Assembly: GCF_030144855.1 (NCBI RefSeq)
Contig: NW_026781846.1
Span: 620,001-684,000, forward strand
Direction: 5' to 3'
Source: Hypanus sabinus
Taxonomy: Eukaryota
DNA: 64,000 bases
A program made the position numbers and the translations under genes. How positions within the stretch are numbered: the stretch's first letter is position 1; the number at the start of each line of letters is the position of its first letter. The notes beneath the pieces were generated by a model. That model saw only the letters and a program-made list of their open reading frames with translations, was not told where the DNA came from and made no database searches. Below, piece after piece: positions 2,890 to 46,993 of this stretch.

Positions 2890-4900
2890 AAAATATTCTT
2901 CATGACTGGAAACCGCAATAAAGTTCGGTTGTATAATATCGAGCTCTACCTATCATTGCACTGTCAGTGAATAAATGACAACACTTCACGATTCCCAGAC
3001 CATTAGTTGTAGTCACTGAATACAAGTGGCAAATGTTTAAGCAATCCCCGATTCTGTTTCCTCGGATCCGCATACGAGTCCAGAAATGCAAGGAGCAGAA
3101 CAAGAAGGATATCTCTCCCACCTGTTTACATTCCTCACCATCTGGAGCTCGTGCAAATTCATCCGGTTCTATTTCAGGTCACTGTTCATACTGCAGAGAA
3201 CACTTTATTCTGTTCCTTGCAACATCTAGTTTCATTAGAGCAATATTTACCAATCATTTCTAAATCTTTTATAAAACTATCTCAAATTTATTGTACACAA
3301 ACGTATAACTGAGCGTATCTCGTAATTCTGCAAGTTTCGAACGACAGCGGGTTAACTACATCTCACGCAGACTGTAATTAATCTGACTACTGATGTACAA
3401 TAACTCTCTCTTGTTGTTCTACGCCATTTGCTTGAAACAGCAGAAAACTCACATATTTATTCGCAGCATGCAGCACATTTCTTTTCAAAGATGAAAAATA
3501 CCTAACGTATGTTTGCACGTATACGGGATATTTTAACAATTATATTCACTTTTGTATTGCTAGCGTGAAACATCCGAGGAGATCATGTCGGTTGTGTAAA
3601 TGCGATGAAAGTTCGGCATTCTTATGTTCACCGGTGGTTCCCATTATCTGAACACACTGAACGCAGCTGCATCTATTTCCGGCATTCCGGTACTTTATCC
3701 ACGAACCCACTACTTATAAGCCTGCAGCAGGAATTGCAAATAAACGACACTGAATTTCTTTTAGATATACGAAAATAAAAATGCGCGATTGCCCGAAAAT
3801 ATAAACACGTCCTAAAGTGATGATAGAAAATAATAGTGAATATTTATCCTTATCCGCTGGTCACACCTGATATGAGTACGAAAATAACAACAGAAGCCGA
3901 TGTTAAGTGTCTTTATGTCCAATGATGTCTCGGTCACTCGTTGGTACATTGACCGTACAACATGTAAGGTATTGAATCTGTTCACATCACGTAGCCATCC
4001 CATGCCATCCCGTGCAGGTACTATAAATGTGGTTAATGGTTATACATCACGGGGACATCTATCAACATTTTATTTGCCGCAACGGAGCGGTCATTGACAC
4101 ATAAACGTATAAACAATATATTCTGATGTGCAGCGACAGTGTGAATATTGATTGCAGGGCATCATCAATAACAGTGCCATTGTGCTGTAGAACTTTCTTT
4201 ATAAAGGGGTTTATTGATATGGTTTAATGGTCATACATATTGTTTTCGATATGTCCATCATGATGTTGGACAATCAATGATTTTACCTTTATACTTGAAG
4301 ATGGTTCTGAATAAGCAGTGACATTCTTTATGTGAGAGTTAGTGGGAACGAAAGAAATGTGATAATAACTTTGCAGAATTGCGGGATCTGGACAAGCAGC
4401 TACAATATCCATGTGGCCGGTGGCATGTCAGAGTAAGCACCGTTGACACCCAGATTCTCAGTGATGCGTCTGTAGATTTTTCACAGTCCTGTTCATTGCA
4501 GTATTGGATCCATTGGAAGAAGGGAAATAATCTCAGTTGCTCCTCACAGCCCAGAAAGTGAATCAAATTACCTGTGTCGTNNNNNNNNNNNNNNNNNNNN
4601 NNNNNNNNNNNNNNNNNNNNNNNNNNNNNNNNNNNNNNNNNNNNNNNNNNNNNNNNNNNNNNNNNNNNNNNNNNNNNNNNNNNNNNNNNNNNNNNNNNNN
4701 NNNNNNNNNNNNNNNNNNNNNNNNNNNNNNNNNNNNNNNNNNNNNNNNNNNNNNNNNNNNNNNNNNNNNNNNNNNNNNNNNNNNNNNNNNNNNNTTTATA
4801 TGCGTCTATTGCCGATAAACTTAACATCTCTGTCTTTGAAATAACCGTGGTGACGATTACTATGGAATATGCAGAATTATAACTAGAAAACAGATGTATA
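2890..4900. repeat. Non-coding segmental duplication, inverted relative to 55770-57810
   Basis: Multiple colinear anchors, e.g. revcomp 4380-4530 ~ 55975-56140, revcomp 3290-3540 ~ 57060-57300, revcomp 2900-3085 ~ 57620-57810. Confidence 0.85.
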
Positions 4901-7977: not shown

Positions 7978-9520
7978 ATGGCATATCCAGCGATTTACTA
8001 CATCGCCGGCGTTTTTTATTCTGCAATTGTTGCGATAGGTGTACCTGGTAAGGTACTGGAGCTGGTCACTGAATGTATGGTGCTACCGTCATCTTGCTTT
8101 CGATCGGTTGCACTTTTTGGACTTTTACTTAGCACAGAGGGTACCATCGTCTGAAATGTGATTCCAAATTGTTTCTACGTGATGATTTTCTATTTTCTTT
8201 GTCAGTTGTGTTAGTGCTGATATTTCCATTAATCCATAGTTTCATATTGCTCGGCTTTCTGGTCGCATTTGCAGACTAGAACCCTTTTCAACTGACCGGC
8301 CAGTCGAATATCGACACGCAGGTCTGTTCTTCCAGAAACGGTAAATTGTAACTTATACATTAAATCTCAGGATTTGAGTTGCAAATTGACCCTTCGGTTA
8401 TTTCACCTCAGATAATGGAAATGGTGTTGTATATCGAGCTATCAAACTTCAGCAGTTCGTGAGTCGTGGAAATCTGAAGCCCGGTTCTAATCTGTCGGAA
8501 AGTCGCCCACCCACTAATTCTGTCCATTATTCTCCAGCCGGACTGCACGTATCGATTCCGCACAAATTGAATTTCTTCTTTTCACTTTGTTTATTTTTTT
8601 CTCTCTCCAATATTTTTTGTAGTTAATTTAACGGCGATTGTCATCCTACCTCGTGGAAAATGCGGACTCTCCAAATGCATCACCTGTTACCTGGACGGAA
8701 TGGCAACAGCGGATATGATGGTGGTTATCGTTTTCGCTTTATTAGAAAACACCAACAACATCTACATTTTTTTCAAGATACCTGCTCATCACTCCTGTAT
8801 GCACAGTTACATTTATATTTTTTATTGTTTCGAGGGACTGTTCTGTTTGGTTTACAGTCAGTTTTACCGTCGATCGTTTCATCGCAATATGTTGTCGAAA
8901 GTTTGGGGAACGATACTGCACTGAGAGAACAGCAACGGTGGTTATGGTGACGGTGCTTATAGTGAGCTGCGGGAAAAATGCCCCTTTTTACTTTATAGTT
9001 GAACCCTACGTCATTATTGACAACTTGCCGTGGCGTTGCGCCCTCACATGAATACGCTACTTTACCAGTGTGGAAAGGAATGGAAATACTAGATGGCATT
9101 TTAACACCGATGCTACCGATCGGTTTAATTCTTGTCTTCAATGGGCTAACAGTGAGACATATAATTGCGGCAAATAGAGTCCGCAGAGGGCTTCGGAAGA
9201 GCAGCGATAAACAGAAATATACAGAGTTGGAAAACCGCAGAAAATCGATGATTTTATTATTTGCAATTTCAACTAATTTCATATTTTTCTGGGTGCCGTA
9301 TGCAGCTCATTCCCTGCGATGGCAAACGGTAAATTACCATTATCAGGACAGATATTTGAATTCCCCGGTATACATACTACAGCAGTCTGCGTACATGTTG
9401 CAAACTCTCAGTGTGTGCACCAATACTTGTATCTACACACTGACACAGAGGAAATTCAGACAAGAGCTGAAGGATGGAATGAAGTATGTGTTTACGTTAA
9501 ATGGCCATTTGTGTAGATAA
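7978..9520 (+). pseudogene. GPR139-like GPCR pseudogene (exon 1 7978-8047, exon 2 8623-9520; two frameshifts)
   Basis: Exon 1 MAYPAIYYIAGVFYSAIVAIGVP+G|GTAAG; acceptor TTTTTTGTAG|. Exon 2 reads NLTAIVILPRGKCGLSKC...DRFIAICC...NRRKSMILLF...CTNTCIYTLTQRKFRQEL. Frameshifts occur in a T-run at ~8767-8773 and at ~9045-9050, and they do not compensate. Confidence 0.88.
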
Positions 9521-12029: not shown

Positions 12030-12735
12030 AAAACAGCTCTTTGCCAGGTCATGCAGTTCACAAAAAAACAAGTGCTCGTTAGATAATCGAGGATTTCAAT
12101 GAAAGTGAAACGGCAATAATGTAAATGCTGTATTCATGTCAGAAGAAAACCTGAGAGCAGATATAGTGTTAACTTTCTACAGACACTGCGGTTGTGTGAT
12201 TACACGTGGTGGACTAAGAGAGAGCTGAATTTCCAGTTTTGTCGGAGGAGAACTCGTTAATGGTACTTCTCCACTACGGTCACGATGAACTCTGGTGTCA
12301 TTGTATTTAGAAACTTCTTGTTGTTATAATTTTCATTGCACCCCACACAGGTCTCGGCATTCCTCCATTCTTTCACTGTTTCCATGTACAGGAAATAAAA
12401 AAAGGACTTTTTAAAAACAGAATAATATGAATGCTATGCCCCTCATCAAATCAGCAATTTCAGGGTGGCAGCATTGTGTTTTAAATTTAATTGAGCAAAT
12501 TGCCACGAAGCGATCGAAAGTGAAACTGACAGAAAAATCACCCGCCACGTGACCCAGGACATAGTCGATATGCCCCGGATACTGTAAAGTCCGCATGCTT
12601 CACGCATATGGTATAACAGGACGACGATAATCACTACCATCATATTTTACACAGCCATCGCCACCAGGTAGTGCGTTACACATTTGGAGACACCGGAGTT
12701 TCCTTGGCACAGAATGATAATTACCAAAAGGTTAA
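12030..12735 (-). pseudogene. Degraded GPR139-like GPCR exon 2
   Basis: The minus strand has acceptor ...CACTAGAG|TTAAC, then NLLVIIILCQGNSGVSKCVTHYLVAMAV* (premature TAA) and ...FTFDRFVAICS.... Multiple indels and stops; 3' end approximate; exon 1 not identified. Confidence 0.8.
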
Positions 12736-12960: not shown

Positions 12961-14790
12961 GAAAGGTTTTACAGTTATATTAAAAGCAAGAGGATAGTGA
13001 GGGATAAAATTGGCCCCTTAGAGAATCAGAGTGGTCAGCTATGTGTGGAACCGAAGGAGATGGGAGAGATTTTGAATGATTTCTTCTCTTCGGTATTCAC
13101 TAAGGAGAAGGATATTGAATTGTCTAAGGTGTGGGAAACAAGTAAGGAAGTTATGCAACCTATGACAATTAAAGAGGTGGAGGTACTGGCGCTTTTAAGA
13201 AATTTAAAAGTGGATAAATCTCCGGGTCCTGACAGGATATTCCCCAGGACCTTGAGGGAAGTTTGTGTAGAAATAGCAGGAGCTCTGACGGAGATCTTTA
13301 ATATGTCATTAGAAACGGGGATTGTGCCGGAGGATTGGCGTATTGCTCATGTGGTTCCATTGTTTAAAAAGGGTTCTAGAAGGAAGCCTAGCAATTATAG
13401 ACCTGTCAGTTTGACATCAGTGGTGGGTAAATTAATGGAAAGTATTCTTAGAGATAGTATTTATAATTATCTGGATAGACGGGATCTGATTAGAAGTAGC
13501 CAGCATGGATTTGTGCGTGGAAGGCCATGTTTGACAAACCTTATTGAATTTTTTGAAGAATTTACGAGGAATGTTGACGAGGGTAAGGCAGTGGATGTAA
13601 TCTATATGGACTTCAGCAAAGCCTTTGACAAAGTTCCACATGGAAGGTTAGTTAAGAAGGTTCAGTCGTTAGGTATTAATGCTGGAGTAATAAAATGGAT
13701 TCAACAGTGGCTAGATGGGAGATGCCAGAGAGTAGTGGTGGATAATTGTTTATTGGGATGGATGCCGGTGACTAGCGGGGTGCCTCAGGGATCTGTTTTG
13801 GGCCCAATGTTGTTTGTAATATACATAAATGATCTGGATGATGCGGTGGTAAATTGGATTAGTAAGTATGCCGATGATACTAAGGTAGGAGGTGTTGTGG
13901 ATAATGAGGTGGATTTTCAAAGCTTGCAGGGAGATTTATGCCGGTTAGAAGAATGGGCTGAACGTTGGCAGATGGAGTTTAATGCTGAGAAGTGTGAGGT
14001 TCTACATTTTGGCAGGAATAATCCAAATAGAATATACAGAGTAAATGGTAGGGCATTGAGGAATGCAGAGGAACAGAGAGATCTAGGAATAACTGTGCAT
14101 AGTTCCCTGAAAGTGGAGTCTCATGTAGATAGGGTGGTGAAGAAGGCTTTTGGAACGCTGGCCTTTATAAATCAAAGCATTGAGTACAGAAGCTGGGATG
14201 TAATGCTAAAGTTGTACAAGGCATTGGTAAGGCCAAATTTGGAATATTGTGTGCAGTTCTGGTCACCGAATTATAGGAAAGATATCAATAAATTAGAGCG
14301 AGTGCAGAGACGATTTACTAGGATGTTACCTGGTTTTCAGCAATTAAGTTACAGAGAAAGGTTGAACAAGTTAGGTCTCTATTCATTGGAGCGTAGAAGG
14401 TTGAGGGGGAATTTGATCGAGGTATTTAAAATTTTGAGAGGGATAGATAGAGTTGACGTGAACAGGCTGTTTCCATTGAGAGTAGGGGAGATTCAAACTA
14501 GAGGACATGATTTGAGAGTTAGGGGGCAGAAGTTTAAGGGAAACACGAGGGGGTATTTCTTTACTCAAAGAGTGATAGCTGTGTGGAATGAGCTTCCTGT
14601 AGAAGTAGTAGAGGCCAGTTCAGTTGTGTCATTTAAGGTAAAATTGGATAGGTATATGGACAGGAAAGGAGTGGAGGTTTATGGGCTGAGTGCGTGTAGG
14701 TGGGACTAGGTGAGATTAAGGGTTCGGCAAGGACTAGGAGGGCCAAAATGGCCTGTTTTCGTGCTGTGATTGTTAAATGGTTATATGGTT
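12961..14790 (+). mobile_element. Young 5'-truncated CR1 LINE with uninterrupted RT ORF (12997-14709, 570 aa)
   Basis: KSPGPD, YRPVSLTS, QHGF, YMDFSKAFDKVPH, GVPQGSVLGP, YADD and LEYCVQFWSP motifs; short 3'UTR ending in a (TATGGTTA)-like microsatellite tail. Confidence 0.95.
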
Positions 14791-25420: not shown

Positions 25421-27199
25421 CCAGAAAATCTCCTCCACAATATCATTCTAATCGTTATTGCCAATGAGCAAAACTGCAACAGAGCGTCCATGCATTAGAG
25501 GAACCCAGCGACAATCAGCGCTGTTCAGAAGCGGAGGAAAGAAGATTCTTACATCTCTTCTATTTGGTATACCTGCAGAATAATAATTCCGGACGTTGTT
25601 GAAAAATACGTGAATAAAGAATGTACAGTATGAAAGGAGGTACAGCTTGTACTCAATTGTGCGGATAATGGATCACCCCGGGGAACCTAAAAATATCGAG
25701 GCTACATAATTTTGTGCTGTATACAGATGCACTTATCTGATGTCAGATGCTGTCAATAATATTGTAAATAAAGGTGTTAACATACAGGGTATATTTGTAA
25801 ACACACGGCTCACATATTTAAAAACTCATAAATATTGTGAAGCATGCTGCAAATTAATGTTCAGTCTGTGTCAACAACAAAGAGAATTATTGCACGTCAC
25901 AAATCACATTAATCACAGTCAGAAATAGATGCAGTTAACCTGCTGTAGTCCAGCACATGTAGAAATAAGGATGTTAGTCTAAAATGAAAATAAAACATGT
26001 TACTGATAAAGATTTTGCAATGATTTCAGAGCCACTCTGAACCGCAGAAGAGCAGATACGAAGCAGACAAGTTCAGTGTCATGCAGGAACGTCAGGACGA
26101 TTGCGGGCTCCATCATTCAATAAGCCGAATAGTCTGCAGCTTCAAATCACGTCACTGATCACACTGATAGTGTCATTGCTTCTCTCCACCTCCGCTCACT
26201 CAGCTACGCTGGCCACGCTGCTGACGTCATCCAATATTCTATGCCCATCGTTGAGTACGATGATAACATGGTTGTCTTTGCAGCTTTAAGACCGTCCACA
26301 TTGATAAGGTCACAGCGTTTCCTGGTCATCAGCTGAAATGAATTCCAAAATGCATCTTTTAATTTCCCCCTCTTTGCATATAATTCGCTTGGAGATTTAT
26401 CCAACTCCTTATGTGATCACTGCAGTCATCTTATCTTCGATTATCTACATCAAAGGGAAAAGCTATGAACAAACCATCATTCTGCACATTACCGTTTTTG
26501 TTGTTATCTGCGTGGACCGCATTGGCACTTCTGCCACAAATAACAGCGTAATTAACAAACCAGGTGGACAATCATTGCAGGTACTACTGTCCTGCAGCTT
26601 GAACGTTAATATCAAATCCAGGACCACAGACTAACACATACATAGGCATTTACATTAAAGATGCAACTGCCGTTTCGGATTCCTAAATCCAGTAGATGAC
26701 AATTTATCAAAATGCATTTCTTCTGTTTTCTATATGGATTCGCCACTAGACACCAGATTGGAAATAATATCAAATGAAAACAAATAGATATATCTTGATT
26801 TTACAGATCGGTTGACGGAGCAAAGTGATTGAAAATCGCAGTAATGCAATTTGGTATCAGACTCTCTTCTCATATCAACTTTAGCTTGTGTGCAGACAAT
26901 GGTTCAAACTCCACGTTCTGCCATAAACATACACACTGAACACATCATAATCAGCATTTTTTTTATTATATCTGTCGGTGGAAATAATAAATTGCAGAAG
27001 GACCCATTTTGTGGAAATGAGAAAGGATATAACAAGAGTGGATTGGGTTAAGTCGATTTCTGGCTTGGATGTGTTCAGTAAGTCGAAGGCTTTCAAAGCC
27101 GAAATTTTGAGAGTGCAACATTTGCATGTTCCTGCCGGGATTAAAGAAAAAGTCAACAGACATAGGGATAATTAGTTATCAATGGATATTGGCGACCTG

Positions 27200-30050
27200 T
27201 TTTTTTAAAATTATTTTATTGAATTTTCAAATAGGTTACAGTATAGAAAGAAATAATATCAGCCATCCCCCCACTTCCCCTTAACCCCACCTCCCTCACA
27301 TGTGTATGAAAAAGNNNNNNNNNNNNNNNNNNNNNNNNNNNNNNNNNNNNNNNNNNNNNNNNNNNNNNNNNNNNNNNNNNNNNNNNNNNNNNNNNNNNNN
27401 NNNNNNNNNNNNNNNNNNNNNNNNNNNNNNNNNNNNNNNNNNNNNNNNNNNNNNNNNNNNNNNNNNNNNNNNNNNNNNNNNNNNNNNNNNNNNNNNNNNN
27501 NNNNNNNNNNNNNNNNNNNNNNNNNNNNNNNNNNNNNNNNNNNNNNNNNNNNNNNNNNNNNNNNNNNNNNNNNNNNNNNNNNNNNNNNNNNNNNNNNNNN
27601 NNNNNNNNNNNNNNNNNNNNNNNNNNNNNNNNNNNNNNNNNNNNNNNNNNNNNNNNNNNNNNNNNNNNNNNNNNNNNNNNNNNNNNNNNNNNNNNNNNNN
27701 NNNNNNNNNNNNNNNNNNNNNNNNNNNNNNNNNNNNNNNNNNNNNNNNNNNNNNAAGATCCCCACATAGTAGTTTAAAATGGTTTTAATATATATTTATT
27801 TATTTCCCCAGAAAAACAATAATTTTGTCTTCGGAGCACCTATATATTTAATCCTATCTTTTGGAAATAAAGGCGCCAAATTTTCAGAAATATATATTTA
27901 TTTCTTAAATTATAAGTCTTTTTTTTAAGTGGAATGCAGCTGAATATTGCATTCTTCCAACCATCTATACTTCAGTATGAATCCGATTTCCAAGTAACTG
28001 CAATAGCCTTTTTGGCTACTGCCAATGCAGTTTTTATGGATTCTTTCTGATATTTGTTCAATTTTGGTTTCGGTTTTATCACTTCAATATCATCTAATAA
28101 TAATAATTTTGGATGATGTAGAAGTTGTGTTCCAATAATTTGTTCCAGTAAAATTAGTAAAACTCTAAAATTTGTCAAACATAGTGGAATTTTAAAACAA
28201 GACCAAGTAGAATGTAAAAAAAAGTACCAATTTCTTGATTACATCGGAAACATTGATCAGAAAAATTTCGGTTTAATCTATTTGTTTTTTTCGTGGTGTA
28301 ATATACAATTGATGTATAAAGTTATATTGTACTAATCTTAGTCAGACATTTGTTCTATTTGTCATACTGTCAAGTTGGTCTTGACCAACTTGATTCATCA
28401 ATTTTAATATTCAACTCTGTTTCCCATTTTTGTCTTGACTTATGAATTCCTTGTTTAATTGCCTGTTTTTGAATCAAACTATACATACAGGAAATATTTC
28501 TTTAAACTTTCTACTTTTTGAATTAAAGTTTCTATTTCATTCTGTTATGGCAATAACATTGTTTGGCCTAATTTATCTCTTAAATAAGCCCTTAATTGGA
28601 AATACAAAAATGTTATTTGATATTTTGTATTTATTCTTTAATTGATCAAATGAAATTAATATACCTCCTTCAAAACAGTGTCCTATATATCTATTCCCTT
28701 TTTCAAACCAGTTATATAAAAGTTGGTTATCCATTGTAAAGGAATGTTTATTTTGAATTAAAGTTCTTTTGCTAATAACGATTTCTTTATCTTATCATCA
28801 GCATTTATCGTATTCCATAAATCAATCAAATGTTTTAATACAGGAGATTCTTTCTTTTCCCTTATCCATTTAGATTCCCGTTTATATATAAAATCTACTG
28901 GTATATTTTCTCCTATCTTATCTAACTCTATTCTAATCCATGCCGGTTTATCTACATCAAAAAAAAGATCCAATTAATCTGTTGATTTGCTTTGTAATAA
29001 TTCTTAAAATTTGGTAATTGTAACCCTCCTAGGTCAAATTTCCATGTCAATTTTTCCAACGATATTCTTGACATCATACCTTTCCAAAGGAACTTCCTCA
29101 CACATTTATTTAACTCTTGAAAAAAATTCTGCGGTAATTTTATTGGTAGTATTTGGAATAAATATTGTAATCGAGGGAATACATTCATTTTCACAGCATT
29201 GAATCTACCTACTAATGTTATTGGTAACATCATCCATTTATCAAGATCTTCTTGATTTTTTTTTCAATAATGGCAAATAATTTAATTTATATAAAATTTT
29301 TACATCATTATCAACTCTTATACCTAAATACTTTATACCATTTGTCGGCCATATAAATTGAGTTATTAATCGACATTGACTATAACCTACTTTAGTAAGC
29401 GGTAGAATTTCGCTTGTATCCCAATTTATTTTGTATCCTGATATTTTCTCATATTCTTCCAATCTACAAGATAATTTACGCAACGAGTACAACGGGTTTC
29501 ATTAGATAAAGCAGAACATCGTCAGCAAATAAGTTAATCTTATATTCCTCCTGATTAACTCTGAAACCCATAATATCTGAGTCAGTTCTAATTAATTTAG
29601 CTAATGGTTCTATCGCCTGCACAAATAAAGCAGGTGATAATGGACAACCTTGTCGAGTTGACCTTGTTAACTGAAATGATGTTGAAATTTGGCTATTTGT
29701 CACTACGTTAGCTTCGGGATGAGTATTTAAGTTTTTAATCCATTTTATAAAAGATACTCTTCATCTATATTTTTCCAATACCTTAAATAAAAAGTCGCAT
29801 TCCAATCTATGAAATGCTTTTTCCGCATCCAAAGCAACTGCCACGTTCATTTCCTCCCTCTTTTGTGCCAAATGAATTATATAAAAATTAACCGAGTTAT
29901 ATTATTTGACGATTGTCTATTTTTGATAAATCCTGTTTGATCCATATGTATTAATTTTGGTGAGTATTTAGATAATCTATTAGATAAAATCCTTGCTATC
30001 ATTCTATAGTCCGTGTTCAACAAAGAAATATGTCTATATGATTTTGGCTT
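27200..30050 (-). mobile_element. L1-clade LINE ORF2, 5'-truncated and degraded, with poly(A) end
   Basis: YRHISLLNTDYR, DQTGFI, LDAEKAF, RQGCPLSPALF, LFADD, IKYLGI and GGLQLPN motifs; AATAAA and an A-rich tail at ~27200-27220 (minus). Confidence 0.9.
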
Positions 30051-35450: not shown

Positions 35451-37114
35451 TTTAAGGTTTATTTGCGAGTAAAGTAGAGGATTTGAGATTGGATATGTGA
35501 CAGGTTGCGTGTATGGAGGTAACACGGAGAAGGTATGCCTGCTTGGGTAATTGAGTGTTCATTAAACACAGATGAAGGTGCAGGAGAAATGGATTATGTG
35601 TGCATGAAAGCTGGAAAGGGGACTGCAAAGCGTGGTAAAATATTGTATCTGTTAATAGATGAAAAACTTATGAATTTACGCCCCGCTCCCTAATCAATAA
35701 ATTCAATACAACGAATTTTGCACTGGTGTGAGGAAAGAGTTATATTTGAATCCTCTTTGCCATATGCTAAGACATGTAACAAAAAACGTCGATCTTTGTT
35801 AGACTTTTTTCAGTCTATACAGTGGGAATGTTTTGCGAGAGTTCAGCAAAGACCATTGCACAGTGATGTTTTACAACTCAGCGTGAGTACTTTTATAGAC
35901 TGTAGATGTCCATAGACGCACTTACCCGATGCTAGTTACGGAAATCATGATTTATTCCATATGGACATTTTGTCCTGTTTCTAAGTCTTGTCTCAGGTAC
36001 AACGTTTCCAAGAGATAAGATGGCACAGACTCTGATGGGATAATAAATAACTCCCGGGAAACTAGTAAAACGAAGGCTCATGAAGTCGGAAACAGGAAAG
36101 AAACATGACNNNNNNNNNNNNNNNNNNNNNNNNNNNNNNNNNNNNNNNNNNNNNNNNNNNNNNNNNNNNNNNNNNNNNNNNNNNNNNNNNNNNNNNNNNN
36201 NNNNNNNNNNNNNNNNNNNNNNNNNNNNNNNNNNNNNNNNNNNNNNNNNNNNNNNNNNNNNNNNNNNNNNNNNNNNNNNNNNNNNNNNNNNNNNNNNNAT
36301 TCTAATGTAACTCCTTCTCTCCTGCGGTAATCACCCCTTTCGAACTTGTCCACCAGTTACATCGCAACTTATTCCACTCCTGTGGTTTTGCACTGTCCTT
36401 CCTGACCGTCTCATTAAACAATCCCTCTGCTTGCTTACCTACTGCCCAATCCTCCGACCGATCAGTCAATTACCCGTACCCCTCTGATATTCACCTGTAA
36501 TCCTGATACCTCGAAGCGAGCAGACTATCTCAGTGTCTCGAATGCAACCACAGAATCTCATGTCCACTTCTCTTACTAACTAATTCCCGATCGCAACTAC
36601 CGTCCCCTTCTCTCCTACCCCTTCCCCGTCCCATCTGAGCAATCGTGTCAGTTTCAGAGACATTGACCCGATCGCTGTGGCTACACTGCTAGCTCGTCCC
36701 TCCCCACAGTGCCCAAAGTGGTATACTGATTTCTGAGACTGATCCCGGTTGTAATCGGCACTGGCTGTTCATTTCTTACCAGCTCCTGACACTCACTGAG
36801 GTGTATGTCTCCTAAAACATTGTGGTGACCATCTCCTTGCAGCCCTTATCTTTCAACTCCTCAGTGTCCCTTATGACCCGACGATCATCGAGCTGCAATT
36901 CCAGTTTCTTAATGATTTCCATAAGGAAATGTCGCTCGGTACACCTGCTGAAGATGTCACTATCCGGGAGAAAATCACGGAATATCAATACCTCATAAAA
37001 AGAAAACACATCTGCACTGGGACCATCCGCACTATCAGAGGACGAATGAAGAATAAACTGATCAGATACTTGCTCGACAAAGCTTGTTCTCGGTGAAGCC
37101 GCTCCATTCTCGCT

Positions 37115-39883: not shown

Positions 39884-40797
39884 TCACATTGTTTGTTTTC
39901 TAAATCTCTTCATAAAAATCCGATTCAACGGGTATTTCACTGCATTCTTCAGTTCCTCTCTGAATTTGCTCTGAGTCAGTCCGCAAATACAAGTGTTGGT
40001 GCAGGAACGGAGAACCTGCAGCATCGCGGAAATCTCTTCTGCGATGTAACAGGGGTCCGGGACAGAATAAACATATCTCATTGAAATTAGTTGATAGACA
40101 TAAAATACCACTTGTGTTCCCCACAACAATATGAAACTACAGGATATGGTGAAGAGCAAAATGATGGATTTGCGTCGGTTCTCCATCTCCCAGTCCCTGT
40201 CAGTCTCTCCACTCTTTTGTGCCCGGAGCCCCTTACGGGCTCGAGTGACTGCTAGAATCCGCCTGACAGTTAGTATATTGAACAGCAAAATCAGAAATAA
40301 TGGGGCACAAGGGGTGAAAATGCGGTGAAAAAATTCAAATACGGCCCATGCCGGAGAGTTTCCGAAACTCGATGTAAGAGCACAATACCAGGGAACACTA
40401 TCGACTGGTACGACAGGCTCGTATATAAAGTACCAGGGGACACTCTCCAAGCAGGTCAGCACACTCACTGTCCCGATAACCACGGCCGCCGTTGTCTCGG
40501 TGCAATATTTTGTTTTCAGCTTCTCACAGCAAATAGCCACAAATCGATCGACGGTGAAAGCGACAGTCAGCCAGACGGAGGTCGTAGTGCTCGCAAATAC
40601 CAGCCATCCACCGAGACTACACACAGGAGTGATGAAAAGGAATGATCGGGGAAAATAAAACGATGCAGTCCACCCCAGCAGCGGATCCGAGATAACAACC
40701 AGGAGATCGGCCGTTGCCATTCCCATCATGTATCGAGTGACACATTTGGAGAGACCGCACTTTCCCCGGAGCAAGATCACAATCGCCACCAAGTTCG
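39884..40797 (-). CDS. GPR139/GPR142-like class A GPCR, exon 2 (spliced protein 327 aa, intact)
   Basis: Acceptor CTCTCTCATGCAG| then an open frame NLVAIVILLRGKCGLSKCVTRY...ATADLLV...TVDRFVAICC...ENRRKSIILLF...CTNTCICGLTQSKFREEL to TGA. These are GPR139-like family motifs. Confidence 0.9.
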
Positions 40798-41276
40798 CTG
40801 CATGAGAGAGAGGGAACAGCAAGTTGAGAAAAAAAGAACTCCTCGCATTTGCTAAATTCTTATTACCAAAAGATCATTTTATTGTTACAGCTAACTCGGA
40901 CATCCGTTCAAGTACAACTGCACACAATCAATTCGTTTAGCATTAGCGGGCTGTGAAAACCCAGTATTCCCAAATACAGGGCAGCTGCTGCAGACCAACG
41001 CACATAAACCGGAGCATCAAATTACTGAACACAAACTGCTGGAAGAACGCTGTCCAACTCGTTCAATTCCACAGACGTTGGCCGATTCGTTAAATTCCTG
41101 CAGCAGTTTGTTTTCGATCCGGATGCCAGAATACACATTCCCGGTATTTCCATTCCATTCCTGAAATGCAAAACACCGGGACTGGACAAGTGAGAGTGGA
41201 AACCAGCGACAGAAGCGATCACAATATTATAATAAAACTTCAATTCCCATCAACGGCAGGAGACACTGCGGCCTAC

Positions 41277-41441: not shown

Positions 41442-42159
41442 GTATCGGTCTCCTGAGAATGGTTGCACCGCTGACTAACATTCTTAGTTACAGTTAACTG
41501 AACAAACAATTTAATTTAAAACCATCCTTTCTGATGTAAGAATTTGGCCAATAGAAGACAACTACATCAACAATTCTTGGGCGTTATCTAACCAGTGATT
41601 CATCTGGAGGAAATAATGCGGGAGCTCCAATGACAAAGACTGACCTCATTACCGTGCAGTCTCATTTATAGATTTAAGGGATTTGTTGACTAATTGCACA
41701 TCTGTAAGCGAAGTGCACCGACACCGCCTGACCGACACCCCTGCGGTTTCCCATTTTGAACTGCCTTCAGTGCTTCAACNNNNNNNNNNNNNNNNNNNNN
41801 NNNNNNNNNNNNNNNNNNNNNNNNNNNNNNNNNNNNNNNNNNNNNNNNNNNNNNNNNNNNNNNNNNNNNNNNNNNNNNNNNNNNNNNNNNNNNNNNNNNN
41901 NNNNNNNNNNNNNNNNNNNNNNNNNNNNNNNNNNNNNNNNNNNNNNNNNNNNNNNNNNNNNNNNNNNNNNNNAGATATAATAGACAGATCCACGTCGTGT
42001 TAGCACCGGACAAATGAACACGTTGCTGATGTAGAAAAACACGAAAACATCTGCAGTTGCTGGAAATCCAAAGCAACACATAGAATGTTCTGGCAAATCT
42101 CTGCTGAGTTCATTCAGCATTTTGTGATTTTGCTAATGTAAAATAATTGCATACACATC

Positions 42160-44990: not shown

Positions 44991-45580
44991 TAAACTAATA
45001 GCTTGAAACAAAGCTATTAGTTTCAAGAAAATTAGACCATCATTGTTTAGTGTTCTCATGGGTTTCATAACTAGCGAAAATCATCAGTGTTAAACCACAT
45101 GGTCCCTTAGCATTCTGTTTTGAAACACATGAGGTTGAGCTGACGTAACTCAATCTTAGATTCTTCTCCTATTGCGGTACATTTCTTCATTTCTACTTCT
45201 GACTGCAAGTTTATTGGATTGGATGGTTGTTCCTCCTGCACAGATCCTGTGCATCTGTTTTTCTTGCGTAATTTCTGGGATTTCTCGTGTTCATATAAAT
45301 TTTGATTTTAAAACACGTGCACTAAAGCGAACCAAGGGTTCAGAGTTTCCCCATCATTTTAAGTGCATAAAGGTGGACCAATCTGATGAAAACTTGTTTG
45401 CAATGTCGGGCATCAACATCTTTACTCAGTAATAATCTTTAACTTTTTGTTTTACTACATATGGTCTTCTTGCTGCTGAGACTTCAATTAGAAAACCTTT
45501 ATTGCTTGTTTGCAAATATTTCTCATTATTCTCCTATTTTCTACGTTTAGACCACTTCAGTGCTAACTCAGAGGGAAAGG

Positions 45581-46993
45581 ATGGCAAATTCAACGCAGAC
45601 AAATTCACCTCTCAGCAACCTAACAGACATTGAAAGAGGGAGCGCTTACAAAACAGTTGAACTAATCTTCATTTTGATTGTAGCATTATCTTTGAGTCTG
45701 GTGACCATTATCGGAAACATTCTGGTTATGCTTTCTATTAAAGTAAACAGACAGTTACAAACAATTAACAACAATTTTATTTTCAGTTTAGCCTGTGCTG
45801 ATTTAATCATTGGTGTGTTCTCTATGAACCTTTACACCATGTACAGCATCATTGGCTACTGGCCCATGGGCCCATTGGTGTGTGATTTATGGCTGGCTCT
45901 AGATTACGTTGCTGGTTATGCATCTATCATGAACCTGCTTATCATCAGCTTTGACCGATATTTCTGTGTGACAAAGCCTCTCAGCTACCCTGTGAAGAGA
46001 ACCACCAAGATGGCACGGATGATGATTGCAGCTGCTTGGGTGCTGTCATTTATCCTCTGGGCTCCTACCATTCTCTTCTGGCAGTTCATTGTAGGTGGAC
46101 GGACAGTTAAAGTAGGTGAGTGTCATATACAGTTCTTCTCAAATCCAGTTGTCACTTTTGGCACTGGAATAGCAGCCTTCTATCTACCTGTTATTACCAT
46201 GACTATTCTGTATGTGCACATATCCCGTGCTAGCAAGAGTCGGATCAAGAAGGATAAGGAACAGGCAGAGTCAAACAAAGGCACCATCTCTCCCAGTCTA
46301 GAGCGAGGCAAAATAATGAAACCGAATAATAACAACATGTCAAGTGCACCTGATGTATTGCAGAATGTCGAAGTACAAAATGGCAAGGCAGCTGGTAAAG
46401 TAATTACGTATCACTGTGGCCAAGGAGAGGAAATGGGGGTTTGCAATCACACGACTTCCCTTAGTGTCGTCCCTTCCATCCAGAAGGAGGAAGGAACGAT
46501 TGATGAGAGCACAAAGGTCTCCAGTGCACAAAGACATTTTAGCAATCGCAACTCCAAGCTCTTCGGCATAAAAGATGTCACGAAAGTTAAAAAGAGTGAC
46601 TACAGTGCTACTACACTTGAAATGGTGTCAGACAACAGCACCAACAGTGGTAAAAACAGAGAGCTCGCCGCAGCCCACATGATCATTAAAATGACAAACA
46701 CCCCTGCTAAGAAAAAGAAGGGAGCTGTAACCCGGGAGAATAAGGTGACCAGGACAATCTTGGCTATTCTGCTGGCATGTATTATCACCTGGACGCCATA
46801 CAGTGTCATGGTACTCATTAACACTTTATGTTCAGTCTGCGTCCCTAACACAGTATGGAGTATTGGATACTGGCTCTGTTACATCAACAGTACTCTCAAC
46901 CCAGCCTGCTATGCACTATGCAATGCTACCTTCAAGAAAACCTTCAAGCATCTTCTCTTCTGCCAATATAAAAATATTGGAGCAGCAAGATAA
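45581..46993 (+). CDS. chrm2: Muscarinic acetylcholine receptor M2-like, divergent paralog; single coding exon, 470 aa
   Basis: ATG at 45581 (MANSTQTNS..., with N-glycosylation sequons). Seven TM segments with [52 protein letters not shown] and C-terminal KNIGAAR, colinear with vertebrate M2. Polypyrimidine tract and TTTAG acceptor at ~45520-45550 match the usual muscarinic gene layout. It may be a paralog rather than the true ortholog. Confidence 0.93.

What the first reader, a model, noticed from the sequence alone, without database searches (positions are those of the whole stretch)
45581..46993. Intact M2-like muscarinic receptor with a remodelled orthosteric pocket (candidate neofunctionalised receptor)
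Seen in sequence: the 470-aa ORF is M2-like throughout and keeps D3.32 (D108), Y3.33, W6.48, Y6.51, Y7.39, C7.42, Y7.43, DRY, NPxxY and the Gi/o-specifying VTxxIL. However, TM3 reads DYVAGYASI instead of the M2 DYVVSNASV (S3.36G at 45914, N3.37Y at 45917). TM5 reads FGTGI instead of FGTAI (A5.46G, 46166), and TM6 reads [10 protein letters not shown] instead of AFIITWAPYN (F6.44C 46778, N6.52S 46802). Established: these positions are essentially invariant across M1-M5 and line the ACh/antagonist pocket. Inference: substitutions concentrated in the pocket of an otherwise well-preserved, uninterrupted ORF look more like ligand retuning than random decay. This could be a duplicate ACh receptor repurposed for another cationic amine (chemosensory, immune or metabolite sensing), conceptually like cephalopod chemotactile receptors derived from nicotinic receptors.
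Basis: partly seen in the sequence, partly recalled or inferred. Interest (0 to 1): 0.88.

Follow-up and report, generated by a model that had tools for sequence, protein, structure and literature searches.

The report
Stingray extra M2-like receptor, altered pocket
This intact gene is not the stingray's normal heart-and-brain M2 acetylcholine receptor but one of about twenty extra, fast-evolving copies whose ligand pocket has been partly rebuilt, and I found no description of this receptor family in the paper library.

Summary
Window 45581-46993(+) is an uninterrupted 470-aa M2-type receptor with S3.36G, N3.37Y, V3.40I, F6.44C and N6.52S. One label is wrong: FGTAI>FGTGI is A5.43G, not the DREADD position A5.46G.

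It is not the CHRM2 ortholog. Hypanus sabinus and Hemitrygon akajei each have a canonical "M2a" with an untouched pocket on a large chromosome. The window gene is one of at least 23 annotated H. sabinus M2-like loci, all on unplaced scaffolds. Hemitrygon has at least 14 and Mobula birostris 7. All of them form one clade beside the myliobatiform M2a. Sharks carry an independent, older M2-like cluster.

The pocket changes are identical in four H. sabinus copies and in most Hemitrygon copies of the same subfamily, so they are not read errors. These paralogs change 4-7 times faster than M2a. Even so, their 7TM core changes 4-6 times more slowly than ICL3 (p~1e-5), so the core is still constrained.

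Concentration of changes in the pocket is only weakly significant (p 0.02-0.08). I found no real evidence of expression. Paralog DNA was unobtainable, so no proper dN/dS was possible.

Best reading: a selectively maintained, Gi-type duplicate that still binds a cationic amine but has lost the acetyl-sensing half of the M2 pocket. The ligand is unknown.

The scan had already noted this gene on this same window, not on other DNA. I found no paper describing the family.

The parts
45520..45550 (+). Candidate 3' splice site: a polypyrimidine tract ending in AG at 45549-45550, 30 nt upstream of the ATG
   Evidence: Read directly. It implies an upstream non-coding exon, as in CHRM2 genes. It argues for a DNA-level duplication rather than a processed retrocopy (inference).
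45581..46993 (+). Single-exon CDS of a 470-aa CHRM2-derived receptor (dasyatid M2-like subfamily 'A'). The ATG sits in a strong Kozak context (A at -3, G at +4).
   Evidence: PDB best hit is human M2, E 1e-202. Pfam 7tm_1, E 1e-60. 91% identical to the Hemitrygon akajei M2-like protein P0002.
45773..45775 (+). Codon 65: Y2.41N
   Evidence: Tyr in all canonical M2 and in all other paralog subfamilies.
45911..45928 (+). TM3 codons 111-116: V3.35A, S3.36G, N3.37Y and V3.40I (D3.32 and Y3.33 just upstream are kept)
   Evidence: Fixed in 8 of 8 subfamily-A proteins of two species. The canonical residues are invariant in 17 M2 orthologs.
46166..46168 (+).
   Evidence: P5.50 is residue 203. Gly is shared by all dasyatid subfamilies A-D. 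Ala is kept in Mobula copies and in canonical M2a.
46778..46780 (+). Codon 400: F6.44C (PIF/connector position)
   Evidence: Cys in subfamilies A, B and D. Phe in subfamily C, Mobula E and canonical M2a.
46802..46804 (+). Codon 408: N6.52S
   Evidence: Asn404(6.52) of human M2 is needed for full activation by ACh (PMC11987023).
46739..46759 (+). Codons 387-393 at the N-terminal end of TM6: K6.31N followed by the retained Gi-type V-T-x-x-I-L motif

Best explanation
The window gene is an extra copy of the M2 muscarinic receptor gene that is kept by selection. It belongs to a multi-copy family specific to whiptail stingrays (called subfamily A here).

The family began with a DNA-level duplication of CHRM2 in the myliobatiform ancestor. 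It was then amplified as blocks on DNA that is still unplaced in the assemblies.

The protein keeps everything needed to be a working Gi/o-coupled class-A receptor that holds a cationic head group:
- D3.32, the tyrosine lid, W6.48, W4.57, T5.39 and T5.42;
- both disulfides;
- DRY, NPxxY and Y5.58;
- the VTxxIL motif.

It has replaced the residues that read the acetyl/ester end of acetylcholine and pass that signal to the activation switch: S3.36G, N3.37Y, V3.40I, A5.43G, N6.52S and F6.44C.

I infer that it still binds a positively charged amine. I expect it to respond weakly or abnormally to acetylcholine and to have lost high-affinity binding of atropine-type antagonists. Its natural ligand and tissue are unknown.

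Shown here: its identity as a duplicate, the family expansion, the fixation of the changes, and continuing constraint on the core. Inferred: Gi coupling, the altered pharmacology and any new ligand.
For: - The canonical M2a is a separate gene in the same species. P0123 lies on a 174.5-Mb chromosome, and the Hemitrygon counterpart P0121 on a 178-Mb chromosome. Both have an untouched pocket.
- At least 23 H. sabinus, at least 14 Hemitrygon and 7 Mobula birostris M2-like loci are annotated with intact ORFs.
- All of them form one clade beside the myliobatiform M2a (SH-aLRT 88). The dasyatid part has support of 99.
- Between the two stingray species, M2a differs at 7 of 470 residues. The paralog pairs differ at 40 (A), 49 (B) and 29 (C). 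Their 7TM core nevertheless changes 4-6 times less than ICL3: 3.9% against 15.8% for A (p=2e-5), with similar figures for B and C.
- Sixteen window changes hit positions invariant in 17 canonical M2 orthologs from coelacanth to mammals. Most are fixed in all 8 subfamily-A proteins.
- Fourteen of those 16 positions are also changed in the independent shark paralogs (p=0.0025).
- If the divergence were neutral at the ICL3-calibrated level, substitutions alone would leave the ORF open in only about 3% of trials.
- A splice acceptor and a strong Kozak context precede the ATG.
- A rough count from related DNA contigs gives 10 synonymous and 21 non-synonymous differences, pN/pS about 0.6. This is about 0.3 in a TM2 contig and about 1 in an ICL3 contig.
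- N404(6.52) is required for full ACh efficacy in human M2 (PMC11987023). N108(3.37) braces TM4 Ser151/Trp155 (PMC3717152).
Against: - No convincing transcript was found. Three RNA runs gave nothing. Runs carrying the species label gave one 186-nt contig at depth 2.5, from a paralog, which could be DNA carry-over. The tissues are unknown.
- No codon-level dN/dS was possible, because paralog DNA could not be fetched.
- Pocket enrichment is weak (p 0.02-0.08).
- Copies within a species are nearly identical (0-4 residues apart) and sit on unplaced scaffolds. Part of the copy count may therefore be assembly redundancy.
- The pattern resembles amplification of a block rather than diversification of a ligand repertoire.
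- Some family members look damaged: W6.48C in two subfamily-C copies and one 'LOW QUALITY PROTEIN'.
- The window around the gene is full of retroelement and broken GPR139-like GPCR sequence.
Confidence: 0.55

Rival explanations
1. It is still a genuine acetylcholine receptor. On this view it is a dosage-amplified or tissue-specialised M2 duplicate whose pocket changes only shift potency, efficacy or antagonist sensitivity, with no new ligand.
For: The whole cation-binding cage and both TM5 threonines are retained in every copy (D3.32, Y3.33, Y6.51, Y7.39, Y7.43, W6.48, T5.39, T5.42). Mobula copies of the same clade keep a fully canonical pocket apart from V3.35A, so the family began as ACh-type receptors. 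From my own knowledge, older M3 mutagenesis found that replacing N6.52 hurt atropine-class antagonists far more than ACh binding. I did not verify this in the library. N404Q in M2 still binds ACh.
Against: Five or six positions that never vary in canonical M2 over more than 400 million years were replaced and then fixed. Even the mild N404Q change lowers ACh efficacy. F6.44C and V3.40I alter the activation connector.
Confidence: 0.25
2. It is a passenger. The gene copies are carried along in a recently amplified, repeat-rich block. They are under relaxed constraint and heading towards pseudogenes, with ORFs intact mainly because the copies are young.
For: No expression was detected. Protein evolution is 4-9 times faster than in M2a. 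Crude pN/pS is about 0.6. All copies sit on unplaced scaffolds among retroelements and broken GPR139-like genes. Some copies have W6.48C or a low-quality flag.
Against: Orthologous subfamilies A, B and C have persisted with intact ORFs in two genera. All three pairs show a strong deficit of core changes relative to ICL3 (p 2e-5 to 5e-6), comparable to canonical M2a. Neutral simulation keeps the ORF open in only about 1.5-4.5% of trials per pair. The derived residues are fixed rather than scattered.
Confidence: 0.17
3. The unusual residues are sequencing or assembly errors in the true CHRM2.
For: None found.
Against: The same residues occur in three other distinct H. sabinus proteins and four Hemitrygon proteins. 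Related contigs from an independent run show the family. The true CHRM2 is a separate gene.
Confidence: 0.01

Closest known systems
Vertebrate M2 muscarinic acetylcholine receptor (CHRM2; human structures 3UON, 4MQS, 6OIK, 7T8X)
   Same: About 68% identity over the full length, and much higher in the helices. Phylogenetically it sits inside the batoid CHRM2 clade. It shares the same cation cage, disulfides, DRY, NPxxY, VTxxIL, a long ICL3 with Ser/Thr clusters, and a single coding exon preceded by an intron.
   Different: It is not the ortholog, because the canonical M2a lies elsewhere. It has S3.36G, N3.37Y, V3.40I, A5.43G, N6.52S, F6.44C, Y2.41N, K6.31N and other changes at positions that are otherwise invariant. 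It is multi-copy and evolves 4-9 times faster.
Shark 'M2-like' tandem clusters (Scyliorhinus, Mustelus, Cetorhinus, Carcharodon, Rhincodon; predicted proteins only)
   Same: These are also extra CHRM2-derived genes alongside a canonical M2a on a different chromosome. Changes hit the same positions: 3.36, 3.37, 3.40, 5.43, 6.44 and 6.52.
   Different: Their origin is independent and older. The paralogs are much more divergent from each other. The typical replacements differ: N6.52F and V3.40S/G/A.
Trace amine-associated receptors (TAARs)
   Same: A conceptual parallel. An aminergic neurotransmitter-receptor lineage gave rise to a lineage-specifically expanded family with altered pockets while keeping D3.32 (PMC8890504, listed).
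   Different: There is no homology beyond class A aminergic receptors. No olfactory expression has been shown here. Copies within a species are nearly identical rather than diversified.
DREADD engineered muscarinic receptors (Y3.33C + A5.46G)
   Same: Both are muscarinic scaffolds with pocket substitutions that weaken ACh recognition.
   Different: Neither DREADD position is changed here. Y3.33 and A5.46 are both intact, and the TM5 glycine is at 5.43.

Membership tests
Muscarinic acetylcholine receptor family, M2/M4 (Gi) branch | Sequence homology and phylogenetic placement inside the CHRM2 clade | tested here: met
   Human M2 is the best PDB hit, E 1e-202. The gene nests within batoid CHRM2 beside the myliobatiform M2a.
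Muscarinic acetylcholine receptor family, M2/M4 (Gi) branch | Cation-binding core: D3.32, tyrosine lid Y3.33/Y6.51/Y7.39, Y7.43, W6.48, W4.57 | tested here: met
   All are present.
Muscarinic acetylcholine receptor family, M2/M4 (Gi) branch | Invariant N6.52, which senses the ester end of ACh and binds antagonists | tested here: not met
   Ser408. The role of N404 is described in PMC11987023.
Muscarinic acetylcholine receptor family, M2/M4 (Gi) branch | The rest of the orthosteric shell identical to M1-M5 (S3.36, N3.37, V3.40, A5.43, A5.46, T5.39, T5.42, C7.42) | tested here: not met
   3.36 is G, 3.37 is Y, 3.40 is I and 5.43 is G. The others are kept. Invariance across M1-M5 is established knowledge. 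Invariance across 17 M2 orthologs was tested.
Muscarinic acetylcholine receptor family, M2/M4 (Gi) branch | Gi/o-coupling determinants (VTxxIL at the start of TM6) and general activation motifs (DRY, NPxxY, Y5.58) | tested here: met
   All are present in the translation. K6.31N and F6.44C are nearby changes. Actual coupling was not tested.
Muscarinic acetylcholine receptor family, M2/M4 (Gi) branch | Activated by acetylcholine and blocked by atropine, NMS or QNB | not testable with these tools
   This needs heterologous expression and pharmacology.
One-to-one CHRM2 ortholog | The single gene of the species at the CHRM2 locus | tested here: not met
   A separate M2a (P0123) lies on a 174.5-Mb chromosome. 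The window gene is on a 1.196-Mb unplaced scaffold, and there are at least 22 further loci.
Birth-and-death chemosensory GPCR repertoire (TAAR/OR-like) | Lineage-specific multi-copy expansion | tested here: met
Birth-and-death chemosensory GPCR repertoire (TAAR/OR-like) | Pocket diversification among the copies of one genome | tested here: inconclusive
   Subfamilies A-D differ at 3.35, 3.36, 3.37, 3.40, 5.46, 6.44 and 6.52. Copies within a subfamily are nearly identical, differing at 0-4 residues with none in the pocket.
Birth-and-death chemosensory GPCR repertoire (TAAR/OR-like) | Expression in sensory epithelium | tested here: inconclusive
   No transcripts were seen in the RNA runs that could be laid. 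Their tissues are unknown.
Processed retrocopy | Lacks the parental intron boundary; has a poly(A) tail and target-site duplications | tested here: not met
   A polypyrimidine tract plus AG acceptor lies 30 nt upstream of the ATG. No A-tail is seen within 700 nt after the stop.

The most novel reading that the evidence does not exclude
Elasmobranchs have at least twice turned the M2 muscarinic receptor gene into a lineage-specific multigene family: once in whiptail stingrays and mantas, and independently in sharks. In both, the acetyl-sensing half of the pocket is rebuilt at the same positions. On this reading the families are receptors for cationic amines other than acetylcholine, either chemosensory or internal metabolite sensors. 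That would be a new aminergic-derived receptor class, comparable to the origin of TAARs.
Probability: 0.3. Interest if true: 0.85.

Novelty: new variant of a known kind. Interest (0 to 1): 0.68.

Why it matters
Muscarinic receptors are among the most conserved GPCRs. Vertebrates are described as having five subtypes plus whole-genome-duplication copies, and the orthosteric site is identical in M1-M5. That identity is why subtype-selective orthosteric drugs are so hard to make.

A natural family of about 20 or more CHRM2-derived genes changes exactly those invariant residues while keeping the cation cage and the coupling motifs. It offers three things:
- a ready-made natural mutagenesis series for how N6.52, S3.36, N3.37, V3.40 and F6.44 control ligand reading and activation;
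- a set of candidate orphan receptors for methylamine-rich elasmobranch physiology or chemosensation;
- a second example, after the TAARs, of a transmitter receptor being recruited into an expanding family.

All of this can be tested directly by expression and Gi assays.

Tried and rejected
- **Paralog and parental DNA for dN/dS and synteny.** The look-up of encoding contigs returned no DNA for P0123, P0125 or P0002 because the sample file is too large. I therefore used protein partition tests and a crude synonymous/non-synonymous count from laid contigs.
- **Expression.** Three candidate RNA runs gave nothing. Runs with the species label gave a single 186-nt low-depth paralog contig. This is no basis for claiming either expression or silence.
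- **'Half-DREADD' idea (A5.46G).** Rejected. The glycine is at 5.43 and A5.46 is intact.
- **Processed retrocopy.** Rejected because a splice acceptor is retained upstream of the ATG.
- **Second M2-like copy in the window.** None found (tblastn).
- **Strong pocket-specific enrichment.** Only marginal.
- **Literature.** I searched for muscarinic expansions in cartilaginous fish, stingrays, sharks and catsharks, and for the annotation phrase 'M2-like'. Nothing was found. The main mAChR evolution paper (PMC6298421) does not cover elasmobranch expansions.
- **Structure prediction.** Not run. It would only re-confirm the M2 fold, and the tool does not expose coordinates for pocket geometry.

Full report
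**1. The observation**

Window 45581-46993(+) is an uninterrupted ORF of 470 codons. Pfam finds a single 7tm_1 domain (E 1e-60). The best solved structure is human M2 (E 1e-202); M4 comes next and M1, M3 and M5 are far behind.

The residue-level alignment to human M2 and codon arithmetic confirm these changes:
- V3.35A, S3.36G and N3.37Y (codon 111 starts at 45911);
- V3.40I;
- F6.44C (46778);
- N6.52S (46802).

D3.32, Y3.33, W6.48, Y6.51, Y7.39, C7.42, Y7.43, DRY, NPxxY and VTxxIL are all retained.

One label is wrong. The TM5 change at 46166 is residue 196. Pro5.50 is residue 203, so the change is A5.43G. Residue 199 (5.46) is still Ala. Thr at 6.49 is the normal non-mammalian state.

**2. 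It is not CHRM2 but a member of an expanded family**

The closest database protein is a Hemitrygon akajei 'M2-like' protein. It is 91% identical and has exactly the same pocket residues.

Cluster look-ups show the following:
- The window protein shares a 90% cluster only with Hypanus sabinus proteins, so the genome is the Atlantic stingray. Earlier scan notes say the same.
- H. sabinus and Hemitrygon each have a canonical 'M2a' (P0123, P0121) on chromosomes of 174-178 Mb. These are at least 90% identical to manta M2a and have a completely canonical pocket.
- H. sabinus has at least 23 annotated M2-like loci. I call the subfamilies A (5 loci including the window), B (8) and C (10). All lie on unplaced scaffolds of 81 kb to 1.8 Mb.
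- Hemitrygon has at least 14 loci (A, B, C, D) on scaffolds of 1.3-5.4 Mb. Some have consecutive accession numbers on one scaffold, which suggests tandem blocks that mix subfamilies (inference).
- Mobula birostris has 7 loci on one 112-Mb chromosome, which is not the chromosome that carries its M2a.

In the trees all these extra copies form one clade (SH-aLRT 88) beside the myliobatiform M2a. They sit inside the batoid CHRM2 clade, after sawfish, numbfish and skates branch off. The dasyatid copies form a clade with support of 99.

Copies within a species are nearly identical: the window differs from its three H. sabinus sisters at 0-4 residues. Part of the copy count could therefore be assembly redundancy. 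Even so, the number of distinct proteins (4 A, 8 B, 7 C) requires at least about ten true loci.

**3. Sharks did it too, independently**

Every shark examined has a canonical M2a (P0012 cluster) on one chromosome. Each also has several divergent 'M2-like' genes on another chromosome. Cetorhinus has 5, Mustelus has 6 with near-consecutive accessions, and Scyliorhinus has at least 3. They form their own well-supported clade.

**4. Is it constrained?**

Paralog DNA could not be fetched, so I used protein partitions.

Between H. sabinus and Hemitrygon:

| Gene pair | Differences (of 470) |
|---|---|
| M2a | 7 |
| A | 40 |
| B | 49 |
| C | 29 |

The paralogs are thus 4-7 times faster than M2a. In every paralog pair, however, the 281-residue 7TM core changes far less than the 165-residue ICL3. 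For A the figures are 3.9% against 15.8% (p=2e-5). For B they are 4.7% against 18.8%, and for C 2.1% against 13.6%. These ratios (0.16-0.25) match those of canonical M2a comparisons (0.14-0.39). Uniform neutral decay is therefore excluded.

Further points:
- On the path from M2a to the window gene the ratio rises to 0.46. This means a burst of core change after duplication.
- A neutral simulation calibrated on ICL3 divergence leaves the ORF open, by substitutions alone, in about 3% of trials for the A pair.
- Differences in related DNA contigs (run X4) split 10 synonymous to 21 non-synonymous, pN/pS about 0.6. This is about 0.3 in a TM2 contig and about 1 in an ICL3 contig. These numbers are small, and the contigs come from unidentified paralogs or relatives.

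**5. What changed**

Against the H. sabinus M2a there are 28 core differences. Sixteen fall on positions invariant in 17 canonical M2 orthologs from coelacanth, lungfish, tetrapods, ray-finned fishes, sharks and rays. Most are fixed in all eight subfamily-A proteins of both species.
- Shared by all dasyatid subfamilies: G1.40L, G4.43R, A5.43G, K6.31N, F6.60L/I, I7.48L and L460F.
- Shared by most subfamilies: N3.37Y/S, F6.44C and N6.52S.
- Specific to A: V1.36L, I2.63M, S3.36G, V3.40I, T7.36S and Y2.41N. V3.35A also belongs to A but recurs in the Mobula copies.
- Subfamily B adds A5.46S.
- Mobula copies keep the canonical pocket apart from V3.35A. Remodelling therefore followed the duplication, in the dasyatid lineage.

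Pocket enrichment is modest. Four of 17 contact residues changed against 24 of 264 other core positions (p=0.076), or 5 of 18 if 3.37 is counted (p=0.023). The contact-residue list comes from my knowledge of the M2/M3 structures.

More telling is the overlap with sharks. Fourteen of the 16 changed invariant positions are also changed in the independent shark paralogs (p=0.0025). Among them, 3.40 is changed in 16 of 17 shark paralogs and 6.52 in 8 of 17, mostly N to F. This fits either convergent retuning or a shared order in which constraint is released.

**6. Gene structure and surroundings**

A polypyrimidine tract ending in AG lies 30 nt upstream of an ATG in a strong Kozak context. No A-tail follows the stop. 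Both points fit a DNA-level duplicate with an upstream non-coding exon, not a processed retrocopy.

The window holds no second M2-like copy. It does hold:
- a reverse-transcriptase ORF;
- a GPR139-like 7TM ORF with no start codon and a truncated TM1;
- a frameshifted GPR139-like copy;
- a GPR139-like fragment.

**7. Expression**

This could not be established. Three RNA runs that shared some words laid nothing. Runs carrying the species label gave one 186-nt contig at depth 2.5, 96% alike, so from a paralog. The tissues are coded. This is not evidence of silence.

**8. Mechanism**

Retained features predict a folded receptor that reaches the membrane, couples to Gi/o and holds a cationic head group. 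These are the N-terminal glycosylation sequons, both disulfide pairs, D2.50, DRY, Y5.58, NPxxY, VTxxIL, the Ser/Thr clusters in ICL3 and the full cation cage.

The replaced residues are those that read the other end of acetylcholine and couple binding to activation:
- **N6.52.** Asn404 of human M2 senses ACh through bridging waters and triggers TM6 movement. Even N404Q makes ACh a partial agonist (PMC11987023).
- **N3.37.** N108 braces TM4 Ser151/Trp155 (PMC3717152).
- **3.40 and 6.44.** These belong to the connector beneath the pocket (established class-A knowledge).
- **Side-chain size.** Three changes shrink side chains (S>G, A>G, N>S) and one adds bulk (N>Y).

I infer altered or weakened ACh efficacy and loss of atropine-class antagonist affinity. 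A different cationic ligand is possible. All of this is inference.

**9. Verdict**

The reading as a 'neofunctionalised duplicate' is partly supported. Duplicate status, the reality of the changes and continuing constraint are shown. A new ligand or a sensory role is not.

The gene family is annotated only as predicted 'M2-like' proteins. Seven literature searches and the main mAChR evolution paper (PMC6298421) gave no description of it.

Noticed in passing
window 39887-40822 (-): A 312-aa rhodopsin-type 7TM ORF (Pfam 7tm_1, E 2e-19). Its weak best PDB match is GPR139 (E 3e-9). It has no ATG and TM1 is truncated at its N-terminal end, so it is either a pseudogene or a gene with an upstream exon.
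   Followed up: partly
window 8601-9487 (+) and 12393-12733 (-): Two further copies of the same GPR139-like gene, 47-60% identical to it. The first is split over three reading frames (frameshifted). The second is a fragment. This looks like birth-and-death debris next to the M2-like gene. Earlier scan notes report GPR139-like arrays on many other pieces of this genome.
   Followed up: partly
window 12997-14709 (+): A 570-aa ORF with a reverse-transcriptase domain (RVT_1, E 4e-32), so a retroelement.
   Followed up: no
window 26000-30000: A low-GC stretch (0.29 against about 0.42 elsewhere) that contains an N run at 27315-27754. Three more N runs lie at 4581-4794, 36110-36298 and 41780-41972.
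   Followed up: no
proteins P0141 and P0142 (H. sabinus subfamily C): Two copies carry W6.48C, which removes the toggle-switch tryptophan. One Hemitrygon copy (P0147) is flagged LOW QUALITY PROTEIN. Some family members may be decaying.
   Followed up: no
shark proteins P0069, P0092, P0096, P0102, P0104, P0105, P0116, P0120: The independent shark M2-like paralogs carry N6.52F, the residue typical of monoamine receptors, and V3.40S/G/A. Stingray subfamily B carries A5.46S, a catecholamine-receptor-like serine.
   Followed up: partly
Hemitrygon isoform X2 proteins (P0128, P0130, P0133): The 421-aa 'isoform X2' models are the same proteins started at Met50. They lack most of TM1 and are probably an annotation by-product of alternative 5' exons.
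   Followed up: yes
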